IMG/VR virus record: IMGVR_UViG_3300023174_000038
Span: 124,001-188,000 of that record
Direction: 5' to 3' (one strand)
DNA length: 64,000 bases
Shown: positions 40,473 to 49,871 of the stretch, piece by piece
How positions within the stretch are numbered: the stretch's first letter is position 1
How the letters are laid out: each line of letters opens with the position of its first letter
The notes under the pieces: generated by a model
What the model was told of the DNA's origin: nothing
The model's database searches: none
What the model saw: only the letters and a program-made list of their open reading frames with translations
Position numbers and translations under genes: made by a program

Positions 40473-41414
40473 ATGTCAATAACAATAACAACGGGTGGAA
40501 TAACAATGACTGGTGGAGGTGTAAGCTTTAGTGCCGCACCACCCTCCACACCAACAGCCAGTTGGGTAGCCGGCGGAGGAAATATATTATCAACGGTAGA
40601 TCGTATTACATATGCTACTGATACTGCTACTGCAAGTGTGCGTGGCCCTCTTAGTTGGGCAACTAACAAACAGGCAGCTACTGGTAATTTGACTTATGGT
40701 TGGTGGGCCGGCGGATTTGATGGTGTTGCTCCTACTGATTTTGCAAGTACAGTACAACGAATTACATATGCCACAGATACTGCTGCCTCAAGTATTCGCG
40801 GTCCAATAAATTCAGAAAAAACTATGTTGGCTGCTGCAGGAACCACAGATTATGGATGGTTTGCCGGTGGAGCTTTGTATGTACAAACAGAACAATCAAC
40901 AGTAGATCGTATAACATATGCAACTGATACAGCAACTGCATCATTACGTGGTACAATAAGTTTAGCTAGATACTATTTGGGCGGAACATCAGATGGTAGT
41001 ACGTATGGATGGTTTGGTGGTGGTTATGCACCTTATAGAAGTAGGGTGGATCGTATAACATATGCAACAGATACAGCAACTGCTAGTGTACGTGGTCCAT
41101 TAAATATATCTATAATAATACCGGCAGCAACAGGTAATACAACTAATGGTTGGTGGGGAGGCGGATATGCTTCCGGTGCTTCAACAGCAGTATATCGTGT
41201 AACTTATGCAACCGATACAAATACAGCAAGTGTTCGTGGACCATTAAGTCAATCTGTGGGTACTGCATCAGGAAACTTGTCTTATGGTTGGTTTATGGGT
41301 GCTATTAACGTAGATAGAATTGATTATTCAAATGATACTGCTACTGCAAGTTTGCGTGGACAACTAGCAACAAATAGATCTACTTATGGTGCATCAGCTT
41401 CGGGTGTACAATAA
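40473..41414 (+). CDS. Kelch-like beta-propeller virion protein, paralogue 6
   Basis: Six GWFGG/ATDTATASVRGPL repeats. Confidence 0.65.
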   Translation: MSITITTGGITMTGGGVSFSAAPPSTPTASWVAGGGNILSTVDRITYATDTATASVRGPLSWATNKQAATGNLTYGWWAGGFDGVAPTDFASTVQRITYATDTAASSIRGPINSEKTMLAAAGTTDYGWFAGGALYVQTEQSTVDRITYATDTATASLRGTISLARYYLGGTSDGSTYGWFGGGYAPYRSRVDRITYATDTATASVRGPLNISIIIPAATGNTTNGWWGGGYASGASTAVYRVTYATDTNTASVRGPLSQSVGTASGNLSYGWFMGAINVDRIDYSNDTATASLRGQLATNRSTYGASASGVQ

Positions 41415-42294: not shown

Positions 42295-42732
42295 ATGAAT
42301 ACATTTCAATCGTCTTACGACAATAGATTACAATCTTGGTATAATTTACGCAATCAAATCAAATCACTTGATTTAGCTCAACAATGTGTGGAAATTGACA
42401 AGTGGTGGCAACAAGCCCCACTTGTCAACCACTATCTACACCCAATTGATTTACCCACATGGCCCGGGCCTTGGGAGCTTTTGGTAGAAAACACCTACTG
42501 TACGCTTGCAAGAGGACTAGGAATGTGCTATACTCTACTATTAATGAATATTACTGATATAGAGTTTGTGTTAGCTACTGATAGTCAAGGAAATGACACA
42601 TCATTAGTCTTGGTAGACAACGCAAAATATCTGCTTAATTACTGGCCAAACACCGTGATAAGTAATAATCTACAAGATTTTAAAATAGTAAGCAAATTAG
42701 ATATAACAACAATTAATAATAAGATAGGGTAA
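42295..42732 (+). CDS. Hypothetical protein, weak transglutaminase-like (BTLCP) resemblance
   Basis: WPGPWELL...YC...YTL pattern; no clear catalytic His. Confidence 0.4.
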   Translation: MNTFQSSYDNRLQSWYNLRNQIKSLDLAQQCVEIDKWWQQAPLVNHYLHPIDLPTWPGPWELLVENTYCTLARGLGMCYTLLLMNITDIEFVLATDSQGNDTSLVLVDNAKYLLNYWPNTVISNNLQDFKIVSKLDITTINNKIG

Positions 42733-42734
42733 AA

Positions 42735-44207
42735 ATGAAAATATACGTCACCAAAAGAGATGGGACAAAAGAGCCATTAATGTTAGAAAAATGGCAAGCG
42801 CAAGTAGCAAAAATATGTGTGGGGATACCTGATGTTAGCCCTTCAATGGTAGAGATAAAATCACAACTACACTTCTATGATGGAATTTCAACACAAGAAA
42901 TTGATGGAATTACATTACGTGCAGTTGTTGATTTGATTGACGTAGAAAACAATCCAGATGTAGGACATACAAACTATCAATATGTAGCAGGTAAACAACG
43001 TCTATCAATGTTACGTAAAGATGTATATGGTAACTACGAGCCTCCCCGTCTGTATGATATCGTAGTAACTAATGTAGCTACAGGATTATATACACCAGAA
43101 TTACTAGAATGGTATAGTGAAGAAGATTGGAACAAGATGGATGACATGCTTGACCATTCTAAGGACGAGCAATATAGTTATGCCGCCATTGAACAATTGA
43201 TTGAAAAATATCTAGTAAAGAATAGATCAACAAAACAAACATATGAAACACCTCAAGTTAGATACATGGTTGCAGCCGCTACAGTTTTTCATAAAGAAGA
43301 ACCTAATAGTGCCCGTATGCGTTATATTAAAGAATATTATAATGCAGCCAGTGATGGGTTGTTTACTCTTGCTACTCCTGTGCTTGCAGGCTTGGGTACT
43401 CCAACAAAGCAATTTTCATCCTGTGTTCTTATTCGCTCCGACGACGATTTGGATAGTATTTTTGCTAGCGGAGAAATGATGGCAAAATATGCTAGTAAAC
43501 GTGCTGGCATTGGTTTAGAAATAGGAAGACTACGACCATTAGGCAGTCCTATTCGTGGTGGTGAGATTATGCATACAGGCATGATCCCATTCTTAAAGAA
43601 ATGGTTTGGTGACTTAAGAAGTTGCAGTCAAGGAGGTATTCGTAATGCAAGTGCTACAGTATTTTATCCCATTTGGCATCATCAGTTTGATGACCTTATC
43701 GTACTTAAAAACAATCAAGGAACAGACGAAACTAGAGTCAGGTTCATGGACTATGGGGTTGTTCTTAGTGCATTCTTCTGGAGACGATTTAAAAACAAAG
43801 AACAAATAACATTCTTTGATCCCAATGAAGTGCCTGACTTATATGAAGCATTTTACAAAAACACAGAACTATTTGAAGAACTATATGTAAAATACGAAAA
43901 ACGTAAAGACTTACGAAAGAAAACAATGTCGGCCGAAGAAGTATTCAAGTCGGGCATTCTTAAAGAACGAACAGATACAGGACGTATCTACCTAGTGTTC
44001 GTTGATAATGTTATGAATCAAGGACCATTTGATCCTGAATATCATACAATTTACCAGTCAAATTTATGTTGCGAGATCCTTTTGCCCACCAAGAGTTTCA
44101 AGAGAATGAATCCGGAACGCAAGTTAATTCGTGTCAAGAAATCTAATGTTGACGAGTTTATGAAAACGAAATCAAACGACATTGTTAACATTAGGAAGAT
44201 AAAATAG
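42735..44207 (+). CDS. nrdA: Ribonucleotide reductase class Ia alpha subunit, N-terminal fragment
   Basis: ATP-cone start (VTKRDG), QFSSCVL, CSQGGIR, ER..TGRIY and QSNLCCEI active-site loop; ends 33 aa after PTKSFKR. Confidence 0.95.
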   Translation: MKIYVTKRDGTKEPLMLEKWQAQVAKICVGIPDVSPSMVEIKSQLHFYDGISTQEIDGITLRAVVDLIDVENNPDVGHTNYQYVAGKQRLSMLRKDVYGNYEPPRLYDIVVTNVATGLYTPELLEWYSEEDWNKMDDMLDHSKDEQYSYAAIEQLIEKYLVKNRSTKQTYETPQVRYMVAAATVFHKEEPNSARMRYIKEYYNAASDGLFTLATPVLAGLGTPTKQFSSCVLIRSDDDLDSIFASGEMMAKYASKRAGIGLEIGRLRPLGSPIRGGEIMHTGMIPFLKKWFGDLRSCSQGGIRNASATVFYPIWHHQFDDLIVLKNNQGTDETRVRFMDYGVVLSAFFWRRFKNKEQITFFDPNEVPDLYEAFYKNTELFEELYVKYEKRKDLRKKTMSAEEVFKSGILKERTDTGRIYLVFVDNVMNQGPFDPEYHTIYQSNLCCEILLPTKSFKRMNPERKLIRVKKSNVDEFMKTKSNDIVNIRKIK

Positions 44208-44215
44208 TAGGTAAT

Positions 44216-44251
44216 AGTATTTCAAGTATAAATAAGAGTATAGGAAATACT
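44216..44251 (+). promoter_or_regulatory. Late promoter within an RBS-sequestering hairpin upstream of the GIY-YIG gene
   Basis: AGTATTTC (44216-44223) is complementary to GAAATACT (44244-44251), which overlaps the AGGA RBS; TATAAATA (44227-44234) lies between the arms. Confidence 0.7.
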
Positions 44252-44254
44252 TTT

Positions 44255-45079
44255 ATGAAGAAATACATTATCTATTGTCATACACTAAATGGTAAGAAAT
44301 ACATAGGTTATACAAGTAAAACGATGGAAGAACGATTGCAGGATCATATTGGAGAAGCATTAGAAGGAAGTGATAGACATTTCCATCGTGCTATCAAAAA
44401 GTATGGGTCTGAAAATATTGTCTCAGAAATCTTAGCAGAAGTATACAATAAAGACGAAGCCAAAAAGTTAGAAGAAACTTTCGTTGAAAAGTTAGATACT
44501 TTCAAAAATGGCTATAATATGACTCGCGGCGGTGATGGTGGCAACACTCTTGAAAAATATACAGACGAAAAGATGAAAGAGCATCGTAAATTGAAATCTT
44601 ATAACGCTGTTGGAATGAACAATGGCAACGCAAAGCCTAATATTACCAAAGAAATGATAGTAGATGCTGTAGTTCAATTTTGTATTGAGAACAATAAACA
44701 AGGCGATTATTTGTTAAGAAAAGAGATTGAATCGATCCTCAAAGAGCAATTGGGCGTTAGTCAAATGATATTAAAGAATAGAATTGATAATGGGCTAAAA
44801 CAGTTAATTGATGAAGTAAACAAGAAGTTATCTACCCCTGTAAAATATGATCCATACTATAGAGGTGAGGATCATAAGAAGCGGTTAGCATCGGCAACAT
44901 CAAAGTTGCGCTGGGCGACAAATGGTATTGATAATGTAAAACTACCGGCAGATGAATTGGATAAATTTCTCAAAGAAAACCCAACATATAAACAAGGTAG
45001 AAAATTGAAGAATAGTGAAGATAGAAAAGAAATTAAATCAAAGTTGGGTTATAGTAGAATAGGATTAGGGAATGTATGA
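44255..45079 (+). CDS. GIY-YIG homing endonuclease (free-standing, inside split nrdA)
   Basis: YIIY...KKYIGYT...R...H...E...GYNMTRGG GIY-YIG motifs. Confidence 0.85.
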   Translation: MKKYIIYCHTLNGKKYIGYTSKTMEERLQDHIGEALEGSDRHFHRAIKKYGSENIVSEILAEVYNKDEAKKLEETFVEKLDTFKNGYNMTRGGDGGNTLEKYTDEKMKEHRKLKSYNAVGMNNGNAKPNITKEMIVDAVVQFCIENNKQGDYLLRKEIESILKEQLGVSQMILKNRIDNGLKQLIDEVNKKLSTPVKYDPYYRGEDHKKRLASATSKLRWATNGIDNVKLPADELDKFLKENPTYKQGRKLKNSEDRKEIKSKLGYSRIGLGNV

Positions 45080-45372
45080 ACAAACGAATCAAACAGTTAG
45101 CAACAGAAGTTGGTATCAGTGTTGAATACTTAAACAATACCAAACAGTGGCCATTGATAGAGGCATTAGCCGAAAGAATTGTAGAAGAATGTATCGGATG
45201 TTGTGAACAAGTTATTAGTGATCCTGTTCCTGAATCAGTTGATACTTTTGAACAAGGTGGAATTCATTGTATAGATGAGATTCGACAACACTTTGGTATT
45301 GGTATGAGCACAGAAGATAAAAAGATCCTAATCAAAGAACTGTTAGGAGTAAAAAATGAACGATCGGATTAA
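45076..45372 (+). CDS. Hypothetical phage protein (MNxRIKQLA family)
   Basis: ATGA-coupled; similar to the next ORF (RIKQLA...AExIxxEC). Confidence 0.6.
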   Translation: MNKRIKQLATEVGISVEYLNNTKQWPLIEALAERIVEECIGCCEQVISDPVPESVDTFEQGGIHCIDEIRQHFGIGMSTEDKKILIKELLGVKNERSD

Positions 45373-45574
45373 ACAACTCGCTGAACAGGCTAGACAAGAA
45401 TTTTTACAATTGCCAACAGGATACACAGCAGAACAAGTTGGAATGTATCCCCAGTTGATGGAACGGTTCGCCGAACTAATCATCACAGAATGTTTGGATA
45501 TTGCCAACGACACACGATATGATGGCAAGGTAGTTGCCAACCGTATCAAGTTTGTTTTTGAAGTTGAAGAATGA
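45356..45574 (+). CDS. Hypothetical phage protein (MNxRIKQLA family)
   Basis: AGGAG RBS; MNDRIKQLAEQA...ERFAELIITEC. Confidence 0.6.
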   Translation: MNDRIKQLAEQARQEFLQLPTGYTAEQVGMYPQLMERFAELIITECLDIANDTRYDGKVVANRIKFVFEVEE

Positions 45575-45843
45575 TTGATTATTACCAAGCACTAAGAGAA
45601 ATGCACCAGGGCAATGTAGTTAAATATGTTGGCACGGTAAATGGAAATGTAATGAGCGACAAGGGTGCTAGTTTCTGTATGTGCCGTGGTTGTATCTTTT
45701 TATTCGACAACGGTGTAATCAAATGGAACAAGTTGGGATATATGGTTTACGACCCAGACTATCGTTATGAGCTAACTGGAGAGACAGTTGATCCAAGGGC
45801 ATGGAAACCAGAAGAGACAAAAAAGCAAAAGGATAAAGAATGA
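45571..45843 (+). CDS. Hypothetical protein
   Basis: ATGA-coupled at both ends; CxCxxC motif. Confidence 0.55.
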   Translation: MIDYYQALREMHQGNVVKYVGTVNGNVMSDKGASFCMCRGCIFLFDNGVIKWNKLGYMVYDPDYRYELTGETVDPRAWKPEETKKQKDKE

Positions 45844-46856
45844 ACAAGTTATACGAAGAAATAGAATATCTACCCGAAGAGTTAGATGACGAATATGAAT
45901 ACTATGAAATTGACGAAGCGGAGGGACGAATCGCTTTATGTACGCTGGGATCTATTAACTGGGGTGCGTTCCGTAATCCTGAAGACATGCGCCGTGCTTG
46001 TCGCATATTGCATCGTAGCCTCAATAACATTCTTGACTATCAAGATTTTCTATCCATTCAATCTAAACTATCAAACGATGAAATCAGACCTCTTGGAATT
46101 GGAATCACTAATCTTGCCTACTGGCACGCCAAGCGAAGTCTTAAGTACGGAGAGAAAGACTCCTTGGCTGAAGTCAAGACGTGGATGGAACACTTATCCT
46201 TCTACTTAACTGAAGCAAGTGTAGAACTAGCACAAGAACGCGGTCGTTGTGAACATAGCGATAAAACACGTTATGGTCAAGGCATCTTCCCCTGGGAACT
46301 ACGTGCTAAAGGTGTAAACGAATTAACTAACTTTGATCCAGAACTTAATTGGGAAGGACTACGTGCTATGATGCGTAGTCATGGTGTCCGTAATGCTACG
46401 CAAATGGCTGTTGCTCCTGTAGAATCAAGTAGTGTAGTTATTAATAGCACTAATGGTATTGAAATGCCAATGAGTTTGATAAGTGTTAAAGAAAGTAAAG
46501 CAGGAAGTTTTGTACAAGTTGTTCCAGAATATCATAAGTTGAAAAACAAATATCAATTGATGTGGGATCAAAAAGATTGTGATGGTTATCTAAAAACAGC
46601 GGCAGTGATTGCAGCCTATGTTGACCAAAGCATAAGTACTAATACGTTTTATAATCCAGCACATTTCCCTGAGCGTAAAGTCCCAACAACATTGATTGCT
46701 AAGAACTTAATGCAGGCACACTATTATGGTATCAAGACCTTCTATTATAGCTTGATTAACAAAGCAGGTAGTAAGAGCCAAGATGAAACTGTATTAGATT
46801 TACCAAGTGGCTTTAATGATATGGATGAAGAAGATTGCGAGGCTTGTAAATTATAA
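45840..46856 (+). CDS. nrdA: Ribonucleotide reductase class Ia alpha subunit, C-terminal fragment
   Basis: AAGGA RBS; EGRIALCTL resolving Cys, RPLGIG, APVESSS, NGIE, DQSIS, KTFYY tyrosine pair, C-terminal CEACKL. Confidence 0.95.
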   Translation: MNKLYEEIEYLPEELDDEYEYYEIDEAEGRIALCTLGSINWGAFRNPEDMRRACRILHRSLNNILDYQDFLSIQSKLSNDEIRPLGIGITNLAYWHAKRSLKYGEKDSLAEVKTWMEHLSFYLTEASVELAQERGRCEHSDKTRYGQGIFPWELRAKGVNELTNFDPELNWEGLRAMMRSHGVRNATQMAVAPVESSSVVINSTNGIEMPMSLISVKESKAGSFVQVVPEYHKLKNKYQLMWDQKDCDGYLKTAAVIAAYVDQSISTNTFYNPAHFPERKVPTTLIAKNLMQAHYYGIKTFYYSLINKAGSKSQDETVLDLPSGFNDMDEEDCEACKL

Positions 46857-47563
46857 TGAACTATCAAAAAATATATAATAATTTAATAGAGCGTTCAAAA
46901 AACCGATTAGTTGAAGGATATAGTGAAAAACATCACATTATCCCTCGCTGCCTAGGTGGAACAAATGAAAAAGAAAATATTACTCGGTTAACTGCGGAAG
47001 AACACTATTTGGCTCATCAACTTCTTGTTAAGATGTATCCTAACAATTTTAAACTAATTCGTGCAATGCATATGATGACAGTTAATAGTAATTATACTAT
47101 AAGAAACAATAAATCATTTGGTTGGATTCGCAGACAAAACGCCATTGCAATGTCGGTAAGTATGAAGGTATATCAAAAAGAAAACGGTCACCCAAGAGGT
47201 ATGGCAGGTAAAACTAATACAATAGCGTCTAACATTAAACGCTCGGGTAGTATGAAGGGTATACCGTGCCCAAGTCGCGGTGTAAGAGGGCCGAGAGGAT
47301 CACGGGCATCCCCGCTAAAAGTAGTATGTCGGTTAGATAATAGAAAAGAGTTAGATATGGCAAATTTTATGGCATACTGCAAGAGATTAGATAATCCTGC
47401 AAAAGCAATAGAACAAGATGCTAATCGTTCAAAAGCAACAAAAGGTATTCCAAAACCGCAAGAAAAAGTTAAATGTCCGCATTGTCTATTAATCGGCGGA
47501 GCAAATATTATGAAGCATCATCATTTTGATAATTGTAAAGAAAAGAAAGAAGAACATGTCTAA
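46856..47563 (+). CDS. HNH homing endonuclease (MobE-like) between nrdA and nrdB
   Basis: EKHHIIPRCLGG...N...LTAEEHYLAH; C-terminal CPHC...H...C finger; same position as T4 mobE. Confidence 0.85.
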   Translation: MNYQKIYNNLIERSKNRLVEGYSEKHHIIPRCLGGTNEKENITRLTAEEHYLAHQLLVKMYPNNFKLIRAMHMMTVNSNYTIRNNKSFGWIRRQNAIAMSVSMKVYQKENGHPRGMAGKTNTIASNIKRSGSMKGIPCPSRGVRGPRGSRASPLKVVCRLDNRKELDMANFMAYCKRLDNPAKAIEQDANRSKATKGIPKPQEKVKCPHCLLIGGANIMKHHHFDNCKEKKEEHV

Positions 47564-48656
47564 AGCACAGTATAATTTATCTAAACCAACTGATTACCTA
47601 AATCGTAAAATGTTTTTAGATCCTGCAGGTCCGGTCACCGTACAGAGATTTGAAGAATTTAAATATCCCAAAATTGCTAATTTTGAAGCAACGGCACGTG
47701 GTTTCTTTTGGGTTCCAGAAGAAATTTCACTAACTAAAGATGCCAATGATTTCAAAGATGCAAGCGATGCGGTTAAGCATATCTTTACTAGTAATCTATT
47801 ACGACAAACCGCATTAGATAGTTTACAGGGTAGAGGTCCAACTCAAGTTTTTACTCCGGTAGTATCTTTACCTGAATTAGAAGCATTGATGTTTAATTGG
47901 GGATTTTTTGAATCAAATATTCATAGTAGGTCATACAGTCATATTATTCGTAACATTTATGCTGTGCCAAAATCTGTATTCAATACTATCCATGATACAA
48001 AAGAAATTGTAGACATGGCAAGTAGTGTTGGACTTTATTATGATGAATTACATAAAGTTAATTGCCGTAAAGAGTTAGGTCAAGATGTTAACGAAAAAGA
48101 ACACATCAAAGCAATCTATATGGCATTACATGCTAGTTACGCATTAGAAGCATTTAGATTTATGGTATCATTTGCTACAAGTTTAGCAATGGTTGAGAAC
48201 AAAATCTTTATTGGTAATGGTAACATTATTAGTTTAATTCTCCAAGACGAATTGTTACATAAAGGTTGGACTGCTTACCTTATCAATCAAGTAGTAAAAG
48301 AAGATAGCAGATTTGCACAAGTAAAATCAGAGTGTGAAGCTGAAGTATATCAACTTTATCTAGATGTGATTCGTGAAGAAAAAGATTGGGCCGATTACCT
48401 GTTTAAGATGGGTCCAGTTATTGGTTTAAATGCAACTGTATTAAAAGACTTTGTAGATTATACTGCTGTTAGCGCATTGAAAGAGATAGGTATACGATAT
48501 AATAGTCCCGCACCAAAGAGTACACCTATTCCCTGGTTCAATAAACACAGTGATACAAGTAAAAAACAATCTGCATTGCAAGAAACAGAATCAACAAATT
48601 ATGTTATAGGAATAATGAGTGAATCATTAGACTATGATGACTTACCAAATATTTAA
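47556..48656 (+). CDS. nrdB: Ribonucleotide reductase class Ia beta subunit
   Basis: FFWVPEEI, LDSLQGRGP, ESNIHSRSY (radical Tyr), LEAFRF, DELLH; likely start ATG 47556 (MSKAQY). Confidence 0.95.
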   Translation: MSKAQYNLSKPTDYLNRKMFLDPAGPVTVQRFEEFKYPKIANFEATARGFFWVPEEISLTKDANDFKDASDAVKHIFTSNLLRQTALDSLQGRGPTQVFTPVVSLPELEALMFNWGFFESNIHSRSYSHIIRNIYAVPKSVFNTIHDTKEIVDMASSVGLYYDELHKVNCRKELGQDVNEKEHIKAIYMALHASYALEAFRFMVSFATSLAMVENKIFIGNGNIISLILQDELLHKGWTAYLINQVVKEDSRFAQVKSECEAEVYQLYLDVIREEKDWADYLFKMGPVIGLNATVLKDFVDYTAVSALKEIGIRYNSPAPKSTPIPWFNKHSDTSKKQSALQETESTNYVIGIMSESLDYDDLPNI

Positions 48657-48667
48657 GGAGAACAAAA

Positions 48668-48898
48668 ATGAAAGCAGTTATTTGGTCAAAGTACCATTGT
48701 CCCTATTGTGACCAAGCAAAGGCATTATTGGGACAACTAGATATACCGTTTGAAGAAAAGAAAATCGGAGACGGGTATACAAAAGAAGAACTATTAGAAG
48801 CAATTCCATCAGCAAGAACAGTACCACAGATTATTATCAATGGTGAATTAATCGGTGGATTTAACGAACTTAAACAATTTTTAACAAAGGCAGCGTAG
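48668..48898 (+). CDS. Glutaredoxin
   Basis: CPYC, RTVPQI and IGGF motifs; AAGGAG RBS. Confidence 0.92.
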   Translation: MKAVIWSKYHCPYCDQAKALLGQLDIPFEEKKIGDGYTKEELLEAIPSARTVPQIIINGELIGGFNELKQFLTKAA

Positions 48899-49483
48899 TT
48901 ATTTAAACTTGCACTTATTACCATGTGATCTGGCAAAGTTCCTTATGTCCACCTCTTTATTGCAGTGTGGACATAATTTTTTAGGTACTGGTTTTCCGTA
49001 CATAGGATTCTTTTCACCCTTATTAGCACACTGTGGTAGTTTATATCCTGATTTACCTTTATTCCATACCGTCTTACCTAGCATTTTTAATCTTCTTTTT
49101 TCAACTGACTCAGAAGATTGTTTCCTCCCGATAGCTTTATTTCTAATCAATTCCTTTGAATCATTAGACATAGTTGAACCTAATTTCCTTCCAGCTCCTG
49201 AACCTGATTCAGGTATTTTGTTAGCCCAAATTTTATTACCGTAATCATCTTGTGCTGATACTATATTCCAAAGTGTGCTATAAAAAATACCCCAATGGAT
49301 TAATACTGCTTTATCATCAGTTTGTAACAATACTTCTGTATCTATCATGTATCCATACTTACTAAGGTGCTTTTTCCAATCGGTACCTGAACCATAATAC
49401 GTATATGGATTTTGTTTTGTGTAACCAAAGTATCTAAGACCTGTCTTTTTATGGGTCTTTATATATAGTGAATAAATAGTCAT
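48899..49483 (-). CDS. Seg-like GIY-YIG homing endonuclease with NUMOD3-like repeats and Zn finger
   Basis: YSLYIKTH..TGLRYFGYT...YYGSG; WNKG, KNPMYGK, CPHC; likely start MTIYS at 49483 after AAGGA. Confidence 0.75.
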   Translation of the reverse strand: MTIYSLYIKTHKKTGLRYFGYTKQNPYTYYGSGTDWKKHLSKYGYMIDTEVLLQTDDKAVLIHWGIFYSTLWNIVSAQDDYGNKIWANKIPESGSGAGRKLGSTMSNDSKELIRNKAIGRKQSSESVEKRRLKMLGKTVWNKGKSGYKLPQCANKGEKNPMYGKPVPKKLCPHCNKEVDIRNFARSHGNKCKFK

Positions 49484-49543
49484 GCTGTGATTCCTTTTCA
49501 ATCATAGAGTAGTTGGGAACTCCAATTCCGCGAACTACACTCT

Positions 49544-49551
49544 TATTTATA
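49544..49551 (-). promoter_or_regulatory. T4-type late promoter for the minus-strand endonuclease
   Basis: TATTTATA on + is TATAAATA on -, about 60 nt upstream of ATG 49483. Confidence 0.65.
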
Positions 49552-49565
49552 CAAAAAGGATAAAA

Positions 49566-49871
49566 ATGAAATTTATAACAGGGTCGGTCATGACGATAAA
49601 AATGAATAGCGGAGAAGAGTTAATAGCCAAAGTGACTAGCACACCTGATGAAGGTGGGTTTATCACCATTGAAGAACCAGTATCTATTGCACCAAGTCAA
49701 CAGGGTATGCAAATGATTCCAAGTATCTTTACCGCAGATCCGAAGGGTGAATTTAAGCTAAATACTACTAGTGTTGCAATGTATGCAGAGACAGATGATA
49801 ACATCAAAGACAAGTACCTAGAAGCAACAACTGGCATTAAGGTACCTAGTAAAAAAATCGTATTGGGATAA
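49566..49871 (+). CDS. Conserved T4-like phage protein, probable Sm-like beta fold
   Basis: TIKMNSGEELIAKV...EP pattern; AAGGA RBS. Confidence 0.5.
   Translation: MKFITGSVMTIKMNSGEELIAKVTSTPDEGGFITIEEPVSIAPSQQGMQMIPSIFTADPKGEFKLNTTSVAMYAETDDNIKDKYLEATTGIKVPSKKIVLG

What the first reader, a model, noticed from the sequence alone, without database searches (positions are those of the whole stretch)
44106..45914. Complementary charged tails on the two NrdA halves (electrostatic clasp)
Seen: the N-half ends with a 33-aa non-RNR extension MNPERKLIRVKKSNVDEFMKTKSNDIVNIRKIK (10 K/R, 4 D/E). The C-half begins with a 25-aa extension MNKLYEEIEYLPEELDDEYEYYEID (11 D/E, 1 K, 5 Y). Both have alternating beta-strand-like segments (KLIRVK; YEYYEID). 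Inference: these are an evolved heterodimerisation module that rejoins the split enzyme, like charge-driven capture in split inteins but without splicing. It could serve as a portable split-protein tag.
Basis: partly seen in the sequence, partly recalled or inferred. Interest (0 to 1): 0.72.

Follow-up and report, generated by a model that had tools for sequence, protein, structure and literature searches.

The report
Charged assembly tails on split NrdA
A jumbo phage's ribonucleotide reductase gene is cut in two by a homing-endonuclease insertion, and the basic and acidic tails at the cut are real, strongly conserved relatives of the tails already shown to be essential in phage Aeh1, so this is a new member of a known kind.

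Summary
The nrdA N-half (42735-44207) ends in a basic non-RNR tail, and the C-half (45840-46856) starts with an acidic, Tyr-rich tail. The cut lies in the loop between the Cys439 and Cys462 equivalents. A GIY-YIG homing endonuclease and three small ORFs sit between the halves. No intron or intein was found.

This phenomenon is already published for Aeromonas phage Aeh1 (Crona et al. 2011, PMC3045599). There the tails are essential for activity (about 2000-fold loss on deletion). They are not needed for the two halves to associate; they are needed for dimerisation of the heterodimers and for holoenzyme assembly.

New findings here:
- The N tail is significantly similar to the Aeh1 tail and to that of a Tequatrovirus subgroup (shuffle p = 2e-4). 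That paper had found no database matches.
- Both tails are under purifying selection as strong as, or stronger than, the neighbouring enzyme core.
- They persist in sister alleles with different endonucleases, or none, between the halves.
- Tail-split, unsplit and split-intein alleles coexist in this phage group.

A tail profile found nothing outside nrdA, so there is no sign of a portable tag.

The parts
42735..44207 (+). nrdA N-half (NrdA-a equivalent), 490 aa: ATP-cone, all-alpha domain and the first half of the barrel. It carries the Cys225, Cys439 and Glu441 equivalents (Cys230, Cys445 and Glu447 here).
   Evidence: ORF list. Pfam PF03477, PF00317 and PF02867 profile 1-222. 62% identical to the unsplit NrdA of Xanthomonas phage BUDD.
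44100..44204 (+). 12 K/R and 4 D/E in 35 aa. Conserved motifs are KLIRVKK, V-EFMK-K and DIV-IRKI.
   Evidence: Similar to the Aeh1 and FL12 tails, p = 2e-4. Interface residues 445-472, 474-475, 478-479 and 481-489 in the complex model.
44211..44249 (+). Hairpin between the N-half stop and the endonuclease start. Its 3' arm holds the endonuclease's Shine-Dalgarno sequence, and its loop holds TATAAATA (44227-44234).
   Evidence: RNA fold -11.7 kcal/mol, z = -3.45. The same layout occurs upstream of different endonucleases in sister alleles. A role in late-only translation is inferred from the Aeh1 mobE precedent quoted in PMC3045599 and PMC2677866.
44255..45079 (+). Free-standing GIY-YIG homing endonuclease gene, 274 aa.
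   Evidence: Pfam PF01541, E = 2e-7. phrog_314 homing endonuclease, E = 1e-26. Homologues at 63-81% identity occupy the same gap in L034, L100, L107, L117 and L125.
45076..45843 (+). Three small overlapping ORFs of unknown function: 45076-45372, 45356-45574 and 45571-45843. The last one's stop overlaps the C-half start (ATGA).
   Evidence: No significant Pfam or PHROG match; one sub-threshold HTH_22 hit for the first ORF (E = 0.0053, below the curated cut-off). An ORF like the second one is the only gene in the gap in L102 and L124.
45840..45914 (+). Acidic, Tyr-rich N-terminal tail of the C-half (aa 1-25): 11 D/E, 1 K and 5 Y. The nearly invariant core is LPEELDDEYEYYE. An AAGGA Shine-Dalgarno sequence lies 6 nt upstream of the ATG.
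   Evidence: Interface residues 4-11, 16 and 18-40 in the complex model.
45840..46856 (+). nrdA C-half (NrdA-b equivalent), 338 aa: second half of the barrel. Cys34 corresponds to E. coli Cys462. It ends in the C-terminal CxxC.
   Evidence: Pfam PF02867 profile 222-522. Alignment to E. coli R1 residues 451-749.
46856..47563 (+). mobE-like HNH homing endonuclease between nrdA and nrdB, the canonical T4 mobE position.
   Evidence: phrog_655, E = 2e-59. 58% identity over 103 aa to the endonuclease that splits nrdA in phage FL12, and 39% to Aeh1 mobE.
47556..48656 (+). nrdB, the RNR small subunit. The start was taken at the ATG that matches the relatives' MSKAQY start; the ORF list starts it at the TTG at 47526.
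   Evidence: Pfam PF00268. Relatives.

Best explanation
This is a 'genes-in-pieces' class Ia ribonucleotide reductase large subunit.

1. A free-standing homing-endonuclease cassette sits in the loop between the barrel strands that carry the Cys439/Glu441 and Cys462 equivalents.
2. The two halves are translated separately and assemble without RNA or protein splicing.
3. The basic tail on the N-half and the acidic tail on the C-half are selected parts of the enzyme. They belong to the same tail family as those of phage Aeh1.
4. Most likely the two tails pack against each other and against the barrel at the cut. This restores the geometry of the broken active-site hairpin and of the nearby alpha-alpha dimer interface, so that (a/b)2 and then the holoenzyme with NrdB can form.
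5. The tail-coding DNA travels with the insertion and outlives the endonuclease. It acts as the element's built-in remedy for the damage it causes.

Shown here: the anatomy, the absence of an intron or intein, conservation and purifying selection, N-tail similarity to Aeh1 and Tequatrovirus, persistence with other endonucleases or none, and scattering over the nrdA tree.

Taken from Aeh1 experiments: essentiality for activity, and the role in dimerising heterodimers.

Inferred: that the same holds in this phage, and the tail-tail packing itself.
For: - Anatomy and a clean split at Pfam profile position 222.
- No Rfam intron. The tails have no intein motifs and show only weak similarity (N tail versus C-intein, p = 0.01-0.04, not robust to the number of comparisons) to the split intein found in sister alleles.
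- The C-half has its own ribosome-binding site and start.
- Selection: pN/pS is 0.25 and 0.013 for the two N-tail types and 0.086 for the C tail, with synonymous sites near saturation. The neighbouring core gives 0.16-0.18 and off-frame controls give 0.6-2.0.
- The tails are kept when the gap is 7, 45 or 216 nt with no endonuclease. They are also kept with Seg-like or window-type GIY-YIG genes in the gap.
- N-tail similarity by Smith-Waterman score against composition-preserving shuffles: Aeh1 p = 2e-4 (z 6.4), FL12 p = 2e-4 (z 6.8).
- All three C tails have 11 D/E and 1 K/R.
- Complex model: ipSAE 0.92 in three runs against a best control of 0.00. That mark was reached by 58 of 80 solved complexes and 2 of 110 mismatched pairs. 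Both tails are in the confident interface.
- On a tree of the C-half core, the tail-split label needs 14 changes, at least 5 of them forced by well-supported branches. The window sits in a supported clade of 13 sequences, 11 of them unsplit.
- Aeh1 biochemistry: tail deletion lowers activity about 2000-fold, the heterodimer still forms, and the (a/b)2 dimer and holoenzyme do not (PMC3045599).
Against: - Nothing here measures function in this phage.
- The complex model gives no residue pairs, so tail-tail contact is not separated from tail-barrel contact. RNR barrels are in the model's training data, so part of the score may be memory.
- The isolated halves fold poorly in AlphaFold2 with these shallow alignments (pLDDT 51 and 57), and the C tail is low-confidence coil.
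- Window C-tail similarity to the Aeh1 and FL12 C tails is not beyond what shared composition gives (p = 0.38 and 0.16). Only an intermediate variant, P0070, reaches p = 0.005 against FL12.
- Tree sampling was uneven: unsplit loci came from a top-identity list and split loci from a motif scan.
Confidence: 0.8

Rival explanations
1. One reading: the tails are an electrostatic clasp whose job is to bring and hold the two halves together. Without them the halves would not associate.
For: - Opposite net charges: about +8 on the N tail and -10 on the C tail.
- Both tails are in the modelled a/b interface.
- Electrostatic steering is documented for split inteins (PMC2677866).
- Crona et al. list direct charge-charge contact between the tails as one possibility.
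Against: In Aeh1, tail-less halves still form the a/b heterodimer by gas-phase mobility analysis (GEMMA) and by ultracentrifugation. The defect lies in (a/b)2 formation, holoenzyme assembly and activity. The two halves also share a very large barrel interface without the tails: 396-400 of about 450-465 modelled contacts are confident.
Confidence: 0.2
2. The tails are remnants of a degenerate split intein. It has lost splicing but kept fragment association.
For: - Sister phages carry a real split intein with an HNH endonuclease in nrdA, only 12 codons upstream (L027, L089, L090).
- The N tail weakly resembles the first strand of that C-intein (p = 0.01-0.04).
- Crona et al. raised the idea.
Against: - There is no Cys or Ser at the tail start and no His-Asn at the tail end.
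- The tails total about 58 aa, against 141 aa for the sister intein.
- All other tail-intein comparisons are not significant.
- The weak match is in the wrong order: the N tail resembles the C-intein.
- The N-tail profile finds no intein in 1.84 billion representative proteins.
Confidence: 0.1
3. The tails are neutral read-through into inserted DNA and an accidental upstream start codon. They have no function.
For: Any insertion into an ORF produces such extensions. The N-tail DNA is somewhat AT-rich (29% GC against about 36-37% in the adjacent windows).
Against: - Strong purifying selection with saturated synonymous change.
- Near-invariant motifs across dozens of alleles.
- Retention when the endonuclease is gone.
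- The Aeh1 deletion phenotype.
Confidence: 0.03
4. nrdA is simply inactivated, and the phage relies on the host's reductase.
For: The catalytic cysteines are on different polypeptides.
Against: - Both halves evolve under purifying selection (core pN/pS 0.16-0.18).
- All catalytic residues are kept.
- nrdB and a glutaredoxin-like gene follow.
- The Aeh1 split enzyme is fully active.
Confidence: 0.03

Closest known systems
Aeromonas phage Aeh1 nrdA-a / mobE / nrdA-b (Friedrich et al. 2007; Crona et al. 2011, PMC3045599)
   Same: - The cut is in the same loop, between the Cys439 and Cys462 equivalents (Cys431 | Cys31 in Aeh1; Cys445 | Cys34 here).
- A free-standing endonuclease lies between the halves.
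- The N-half has a basic C-terminal tail, and the C-half has an acidic N-terminal tail with the same 11 D/E : 1 K/R.
- The N tails are significantly similar.
- A hairpin covers the endonuclease's ribosome-binding site.
   Different: - The endonuclease here is GIY-YIG plus three small ORFs, not HNH mobE. A mobE-like gene sits after the C-half instead.
- The host phage is a 349-kb jumbo phage whose NrdA core is only about 40% identical to Aeh1's.
- Window C-tail similarity to Aeh1 cannot be separated from shared composition.
- No biochemistry exists for this one.
Tequatrovirus subgroup with split nrdA (Escherichia phages FL12, HY01, PEC04, vB_EcoM_112; Yersinia phages fPS-2 and fPS-90; 35 records)
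   Same: Same loop and the same tail family. The FL12 N tail against the window gives p = 2e-4. The FL12 C tail against Aeh1 gives p = 2e-4. A mobE-like HNH gene lies in the gap.
   Different: - The inserted gene is an HNH endonuclease.
- The N tail is less basic (6 K/R and 3 D/E).
- The records annotate two 'alpha subunit' genes (HY01 and UFV-AREG1 show no feature under the N-tail match). My paper searches found no paper that discusses these tails.
Split inteins with free-standing endonucleases in 'fractured' nrdA genes (Dassa et al. 2009, PMC2677866)
   Same: The gene order is the same: half, endonuclease, half. The interacting pieces are oppositely charged. Alleles of this type occur in the window's own phage group (L027, L089, L090).
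   Different: Those pieces are true HINT halves (about 107 + 34 aa) with Cys1 and His-Asn-Cys. They are inserted directly before the thiyl-radical Cys and are expected to splice. The tails here have none of these features and lie 12 codons downstream.
T4 topoisomerase II gp39/gp60 split by mobA, with its ~70-aa TOPRIM insertion (PMC11461880)
   Same: An endonuclease-associated split of an essential enzyme, with extra residues at the new termini. These were proposed to act as an assembly aid and were seen by cryo-EM as a pendant outside the domain.
   Different: A different enzyme with no sequence relation. The insertion has little effect on activity when the subunits are fused.

Membership tests
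Endonuclease-fragmented nrdA with assembly tails (Aeh1 type) | nrdA is split into two ORFs in the loop between the Cys439/Glu441 strand and the Cys462 strand, with nothing of the barrel lost or duplicated. | tested here: met
   The Pfam barrel profile ends at position 222 in the N-half and resumes at 222 in the C-half. Loop comparison with unsplit alleles. E. coli numbering.
Endonuclease-fragmented nrdA with assembly tails (Aeh1 type) | A free-standing homing endonuclease gene lies between the halves. | tested here: met
   GIY-YIG, PF01541 and phrog_314. This is a different nuclease family from Aeh1's HNH mobE.
Endonuclease-fragmented nrdA with assembly tails (Aeh1 type) | A basic C-terminal tail on the first half and an acidic N-terminal tail on the second half, both absent from unsplit NrdA. 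| tested here: met
   Composition counts. Unsplit alleles have only a 9-aa loop. Charge outlier test in the phage's own genome.
Endonuclease-fragmented nrdA with assembly tails (Aeh1 type) | Sequence relatedness of the tails to the Aeh1 tails. | tested here: inconclusive
   N tail: met, p = 2e-4, z = 6.4. C tail: window against Aeh1 p = 0.38, so shared composition explains the score. A link exists only through intermediates (P0070 against FL12 p = 0.005; FL12 against Aeh1 p = 2e-4).
Endonuclease-fragmented nrdA with assembly tails (Aeh1 type) | The tails are required for enzyme activity and for the (a/b)2 dimer, but not for a/b association. | not testable with these tools
   Known only for Aeh1. 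Here there is only indirect support from purifying selection and from the modelled interface.
Split intein | HINT blocks: a nucleophile (Cys/Ser) as the first residue of the N-piece, a terminal His-Asn followed by Cys/Ser/Thr, and about 130 aa or more in total. | tested here: not met
   The foreign N-tail part starts at about Asn459 (after native-loop K456-R457 and probably M458) and holds no Cys or Ser nucleophile at its start. The C tail ends ...EID before EAEGR. The total is about 58 aa. No significant similarity to the sister-allele intein.
Group I or group II intron interrupting nrdA | A recognisable intron RNA structure spanning the interruption. | tested here: not met
   A permissive Rfam scan of 42500-49600 gave three weak hits (E 0.3-0.96), all far below their gathering scores and none to an intron family. 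The interruption can be as short as 7 nt in sister alleles that keep both tails.

The most novel reading that the evidence does not exclude
The tail pair may be a conserved, nrdA-specific 'repair module' belonging to a mobile cassette. It would have spread among at least three distant phage lineages: a freshwater-type jumbo-phage group, Aeh1, and a Tequatrovirus subgroup. Interchangeable endonucleases (HNH, two GIY-YIG types, or none) come and go inside it. That would be a third way, beside self-splicing introns and inteins, for a homing element to neutralise its own insertion into an essential gene. It would also contradict the earlier view that the Aeh1 tails are unique, randomly acquired sequence.
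Probability: 0.45. Interest if true: 0.6.

Novelty: new member of a known kind. Interest (0 to 1): 0.45.

Why it matters
The Aeh1 split reductase has been treated as a one-off. Its tails were reported to have no database matches. Here the same kind of tail turns up in a different phage family with a different endonuclease. The N tail is demonstrably related to the Aeh1 tail.

Dozens of natural variants are available, and unsplit, tail-split, endonuclease-free and split-intein alleles coexist in one phage group. This gives a natural mutational series for working out how about 60 added residues rescue an enzyme cut through its active-site barrel. It also allows a test of whether homing elements carry protein-level remedies for the genes they break.

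It does not yet offer a general split-protein tag. Nothing suggests that the tails work outside nrdA.

Tried and rejected
- **Group I intron:** a permissive Rfam scan found no intron.
- **Near-identical phage genome:** megablast found no match.
- **Degenerate-intein origin:** I tested the tails against the 107-aa N-intein and 34-aa C-intein of sister allele L090. Only weak N-tail to C-intein scores appeared (p = 0.01-0.04), not robust to the number of comparisons.
- **Tail-like pairs on other split genes in the phage's own genome:** tail profiles against all six-frame ORFs hit only nrdA.
- **Source or other carriers of the N tail:** a profile search of 1.84 billion representative proteins returned only nrdA N-half fragments, one 79-aa chimera and two repetitive false hits.
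- **Unsplit NrdA with a fused long loop:** none was seen. tblastn matches that seemed to extend into the tail in PEi20, SKML-39 and a Vibrio phage were spurious; those proteins have short loops.
- **Complex prediction:** I left those sequences out and did not send them elsewhere.
- **Isolated halves in AlphaFold2:** confidence was too low to read the tail structure.
- **Word-index search with the Aeh1 C-half tail region:** nothing was found.
- **Promoter and terminator scans:** no more sites than in shuffled sequence. TATAAATA is not enriched in the window.

Full report
**What is there.** The window is part of a 348,701-bp virus record, a jumbo phage. On the + strand the genes run as follows:
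- nrdA N-half, 42735-44207
- a GIY-YIG homing endonuclease, 44255-45079
- three small overlapping ORFs of unknown function, 45076-45843
- nrdA C-half, 45840-46856
- a mobE-like HNH endonuclease, 46856-47563
- nrdB
- a CPYC glutaredoxin-like gene
- a second GIY-YIG gene on the other strand

The Pfam RNR barrel profile is cut cleanly. Positions 1-222 end at N-half residue 455, and positions 222-522 begin at C-half residue 28. The Cys439/Glu441 equivalents (Cys445, Glu447) are on the first polypeptide. The Cys462 equivalent (Cys34) is on the second.

Close relatives with unsplit nrdA have only a nine-residue loop at this point. That fixes the foreign parts at about 32 residues on the N-half and 25 on the C-half. 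Such charge is rare in this genome. Of 283 long ORFs, four have so basic a C-terminus, and only this C-half has so acidic an N-terminus.

**It is not an intron or an intein.**
- A permissive Rfam scan finds no intron.
- The tails lack the nucleophile and the His-Asn of inteins. Together they are about 58 residues.
- They show no robust similarity to the genuine split intein that sister phages carry 12 codons upstream.
- The C-half has its own AAGGA ribosome-binding site, and its start overlaps the stop of the preceding ORF.

**Prior art.** The arrangement and the idea are published for Aeromonas phage Aeh1. There mobE splits nrdA in the same loop. The NrdA-a tail is basic (pI 10.4) and the NrdA-b tail is acidic (pI 3.8). 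[quoted passage not shown] Tail-less halves still form the a/b heterodimer. They fail to form the dATP-induced (a/b)2 dimer and the holoenzyme (PMC3045599). The authors already compared this with electrostatic association of split inteins (see also PMC2677866). They also reported that database searches with the tails found nothing.

**What the tools add.**

*The tails form a family.*
- The window's N tail is similar to the Aeh1 N tail (Smith-Waterman score 48, p = 2e-4, z = 6.4 against composition-preserving shuffles). It is also similar to the N tail of a Tequatrovirus subgroup, exemplified by Escherichia phage FL12 (p = 2e-4).
- That subgroup comprises 35 records of Escherichia, Yersinia, Shigella and Salmonella phages.
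- The three C tails share 11 acidic residues to 1 basic and a D-[DE]-E-Y core. However, the window's C tail does not score above shuffles against Aeh1 or FL12. Only an intermediate variant does (P0070 against FL12, p = 0.005). C-tail homology is therefore probable, not shown.

*The tails are under selection.* More than 90 protein clusters, 78-96% identical to the C-half, keep the tail almost unchanged. About 35 N-half clusters keep theirs.

| Region | pN/pS |
|---|---|
| N tail, common type | 0.25 |
| N tail, second type | 0.013 |
| C tail | 0.086 |
| Adjacent catalytic core | 0.16-0.18 |
| Off-frame controls | 0.6-2.0 |

These values come from DNA of 36 to 41 loci. Synonymous sites are close to saturation.

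*The tails outlive the endonuclease.* Sister alleles with both tails differ in what lies between the halves:
- only 7, 45 or 216 nt
- only a small ORF
- a Seg-like GIY-YIG gene
- the window-type GIY-YIG gene, with or without small ORFs

*The state is mobile.* On a tree of the C-half core, the tail-split label needs 14 changes, at least 5 of them forced by well-supported branches. The window lies in a supported clade of 13 sequences, 11 of them unsplit. Sampling of the two states was uneven, so the counts are rough.

**Structure.**
- ESMFold2 places the two halves together with ipSAE 0.92 in three runs, against a best control of 0.00. That mark was reached by 58 of 80 solved complexes and 2 of 110 mismatched pairs.
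- The confident interface includes N-half residues 445-472, 474-475, 478-479 and 481-489. It also includes C-half residues 4-11, 16 and 18-40, which covers essentially both tails.
- The gaps at 473, 476-477 and 480 fit one exposed face of a helix. AlphaFold2 also predicts a helix at 469-478.
- No residue pairs are reported, so tail-tail contact remains an inference.
- The isolated halves fold with low confidence.
- No split NrdA has a solved structure.

**Mechanism proposed.** The halves are made separately from one operon. They associate through the large barrel interface. The two tails then pack at the cut, restoring the shape of the active-site hairpin and of the neighbouring alpha-alpha interface. 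This allows (a/b)2 and the holoenzyme to form. The last steps rest on the Aeh1 experiments.

The 'portable tag' idea has no support. Tail profiles find nothing outside nrdA in the phage's own genome or among 1.84 billion representative proteins.

**Verdict.** This is a real feature, correctly described, and functionally meaningful. It is a new member of a known kind rather than a new mechanism. Its value lies in showing that the Aeh1-type tails are a conserved family, selected and linked to a mobile cassette, with rich natural variation. My paper searches found no paper that describes this.

Noticed in passing
window 44211-44249 (TATAAATA at 44227-44234); also L029, L034, L091, L095, L099-L104, L120, L127, L132: Between the N-half stop and the inserted endonuclease's ATG, nearly every allele examined has a hairpin. 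Its 3' arm contains the endonuclease's Shine-Dalgarno sequence, and its loop holds a T4-late-promoter-like [TCG]ATAAATA. The layout is kept for unrelated endonucleases (-8.5 to -21 kcal/mol; marginal, -2 to -2.6, in L107, L117 and L125; window z = -3.45). This looks like the late-only translation control known for Aeh1 mobE and T4 endonucleases.
   Followed up: partly
L027:79-2953, L089:358-2390, L090:1233-4953: Sister phages carry nrdA split by a true split intein (N-piece about 107 aa, C-piece 34 aa ending His-Asn before Cys) with a 311-315-aa HNH endonuclease between the pieces. The insertion is directly before the thiyl-radical Cys, 12 codons upstream of the tail split. Unsplit, tail-split and intein-split alleles therefore coexist in one phage group.
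   Followed up: partly
L058:531-3669; proteins P0130, P0137, P0143, P0153: Some relatives have nrdA in three pieces. A 328-aa middle piece starts with a Hint/intein-like domain (PF07591, PF14890) and ends with the basic tail. It is preceded by a 369-aa ORF that was not classified (possibly another endonuclease).
   Followed up: no
L140:1-300 (protein P0037; also P0088, P0097): This is another way of splitting the same loop. The C-terminus of a mobE-like endonuclease runs up to the C-half, which carries only a 14-aa basic extension instead of the acidic tail. The matching N-half is not on the contig, so it is unknown whether a different tail pair is used.
   Followed up: partly
window 46856-47563 and 48899-49501 (- strand): The RNR operon is crowded with endonucleases. 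Besides the one inside nrdA, a mobE-like HNH gene sits between nrdA and nrdB. Its nuclease domain is 58% identical to the gene that splits nrdA in phage FL12. A Seg-like GIY-YIG gene lies after the glutaredoxin-like gene, also with TATAAATA 43 nt upstream (49544-49551).
   Followed up: partly
protein P0242: A 79-aa metagenomic protein has a last 25 residues identical to the second type of N tail, fused to an unrelated N-terminal part. It may be a recombination product or an assembly chimera.
   Followed up: no
window 40473-41414: A 313-aa ORF is built of about eight repeats of a motif like VDRITYATDTATASVRGPL with G-W-(W/F)-G-G spacers. Its function is unknown.
   Followed up: no
L026:5991-6003: In an endonuclease-free allele the N-half stop and the C-half start are 7 nt apart. 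The last codons of the basic tail (AGG AAG ATA AGG) look like the ribosome-binding site for the C-half, which suggests translational coupling of the two halves.
   Followed up: no
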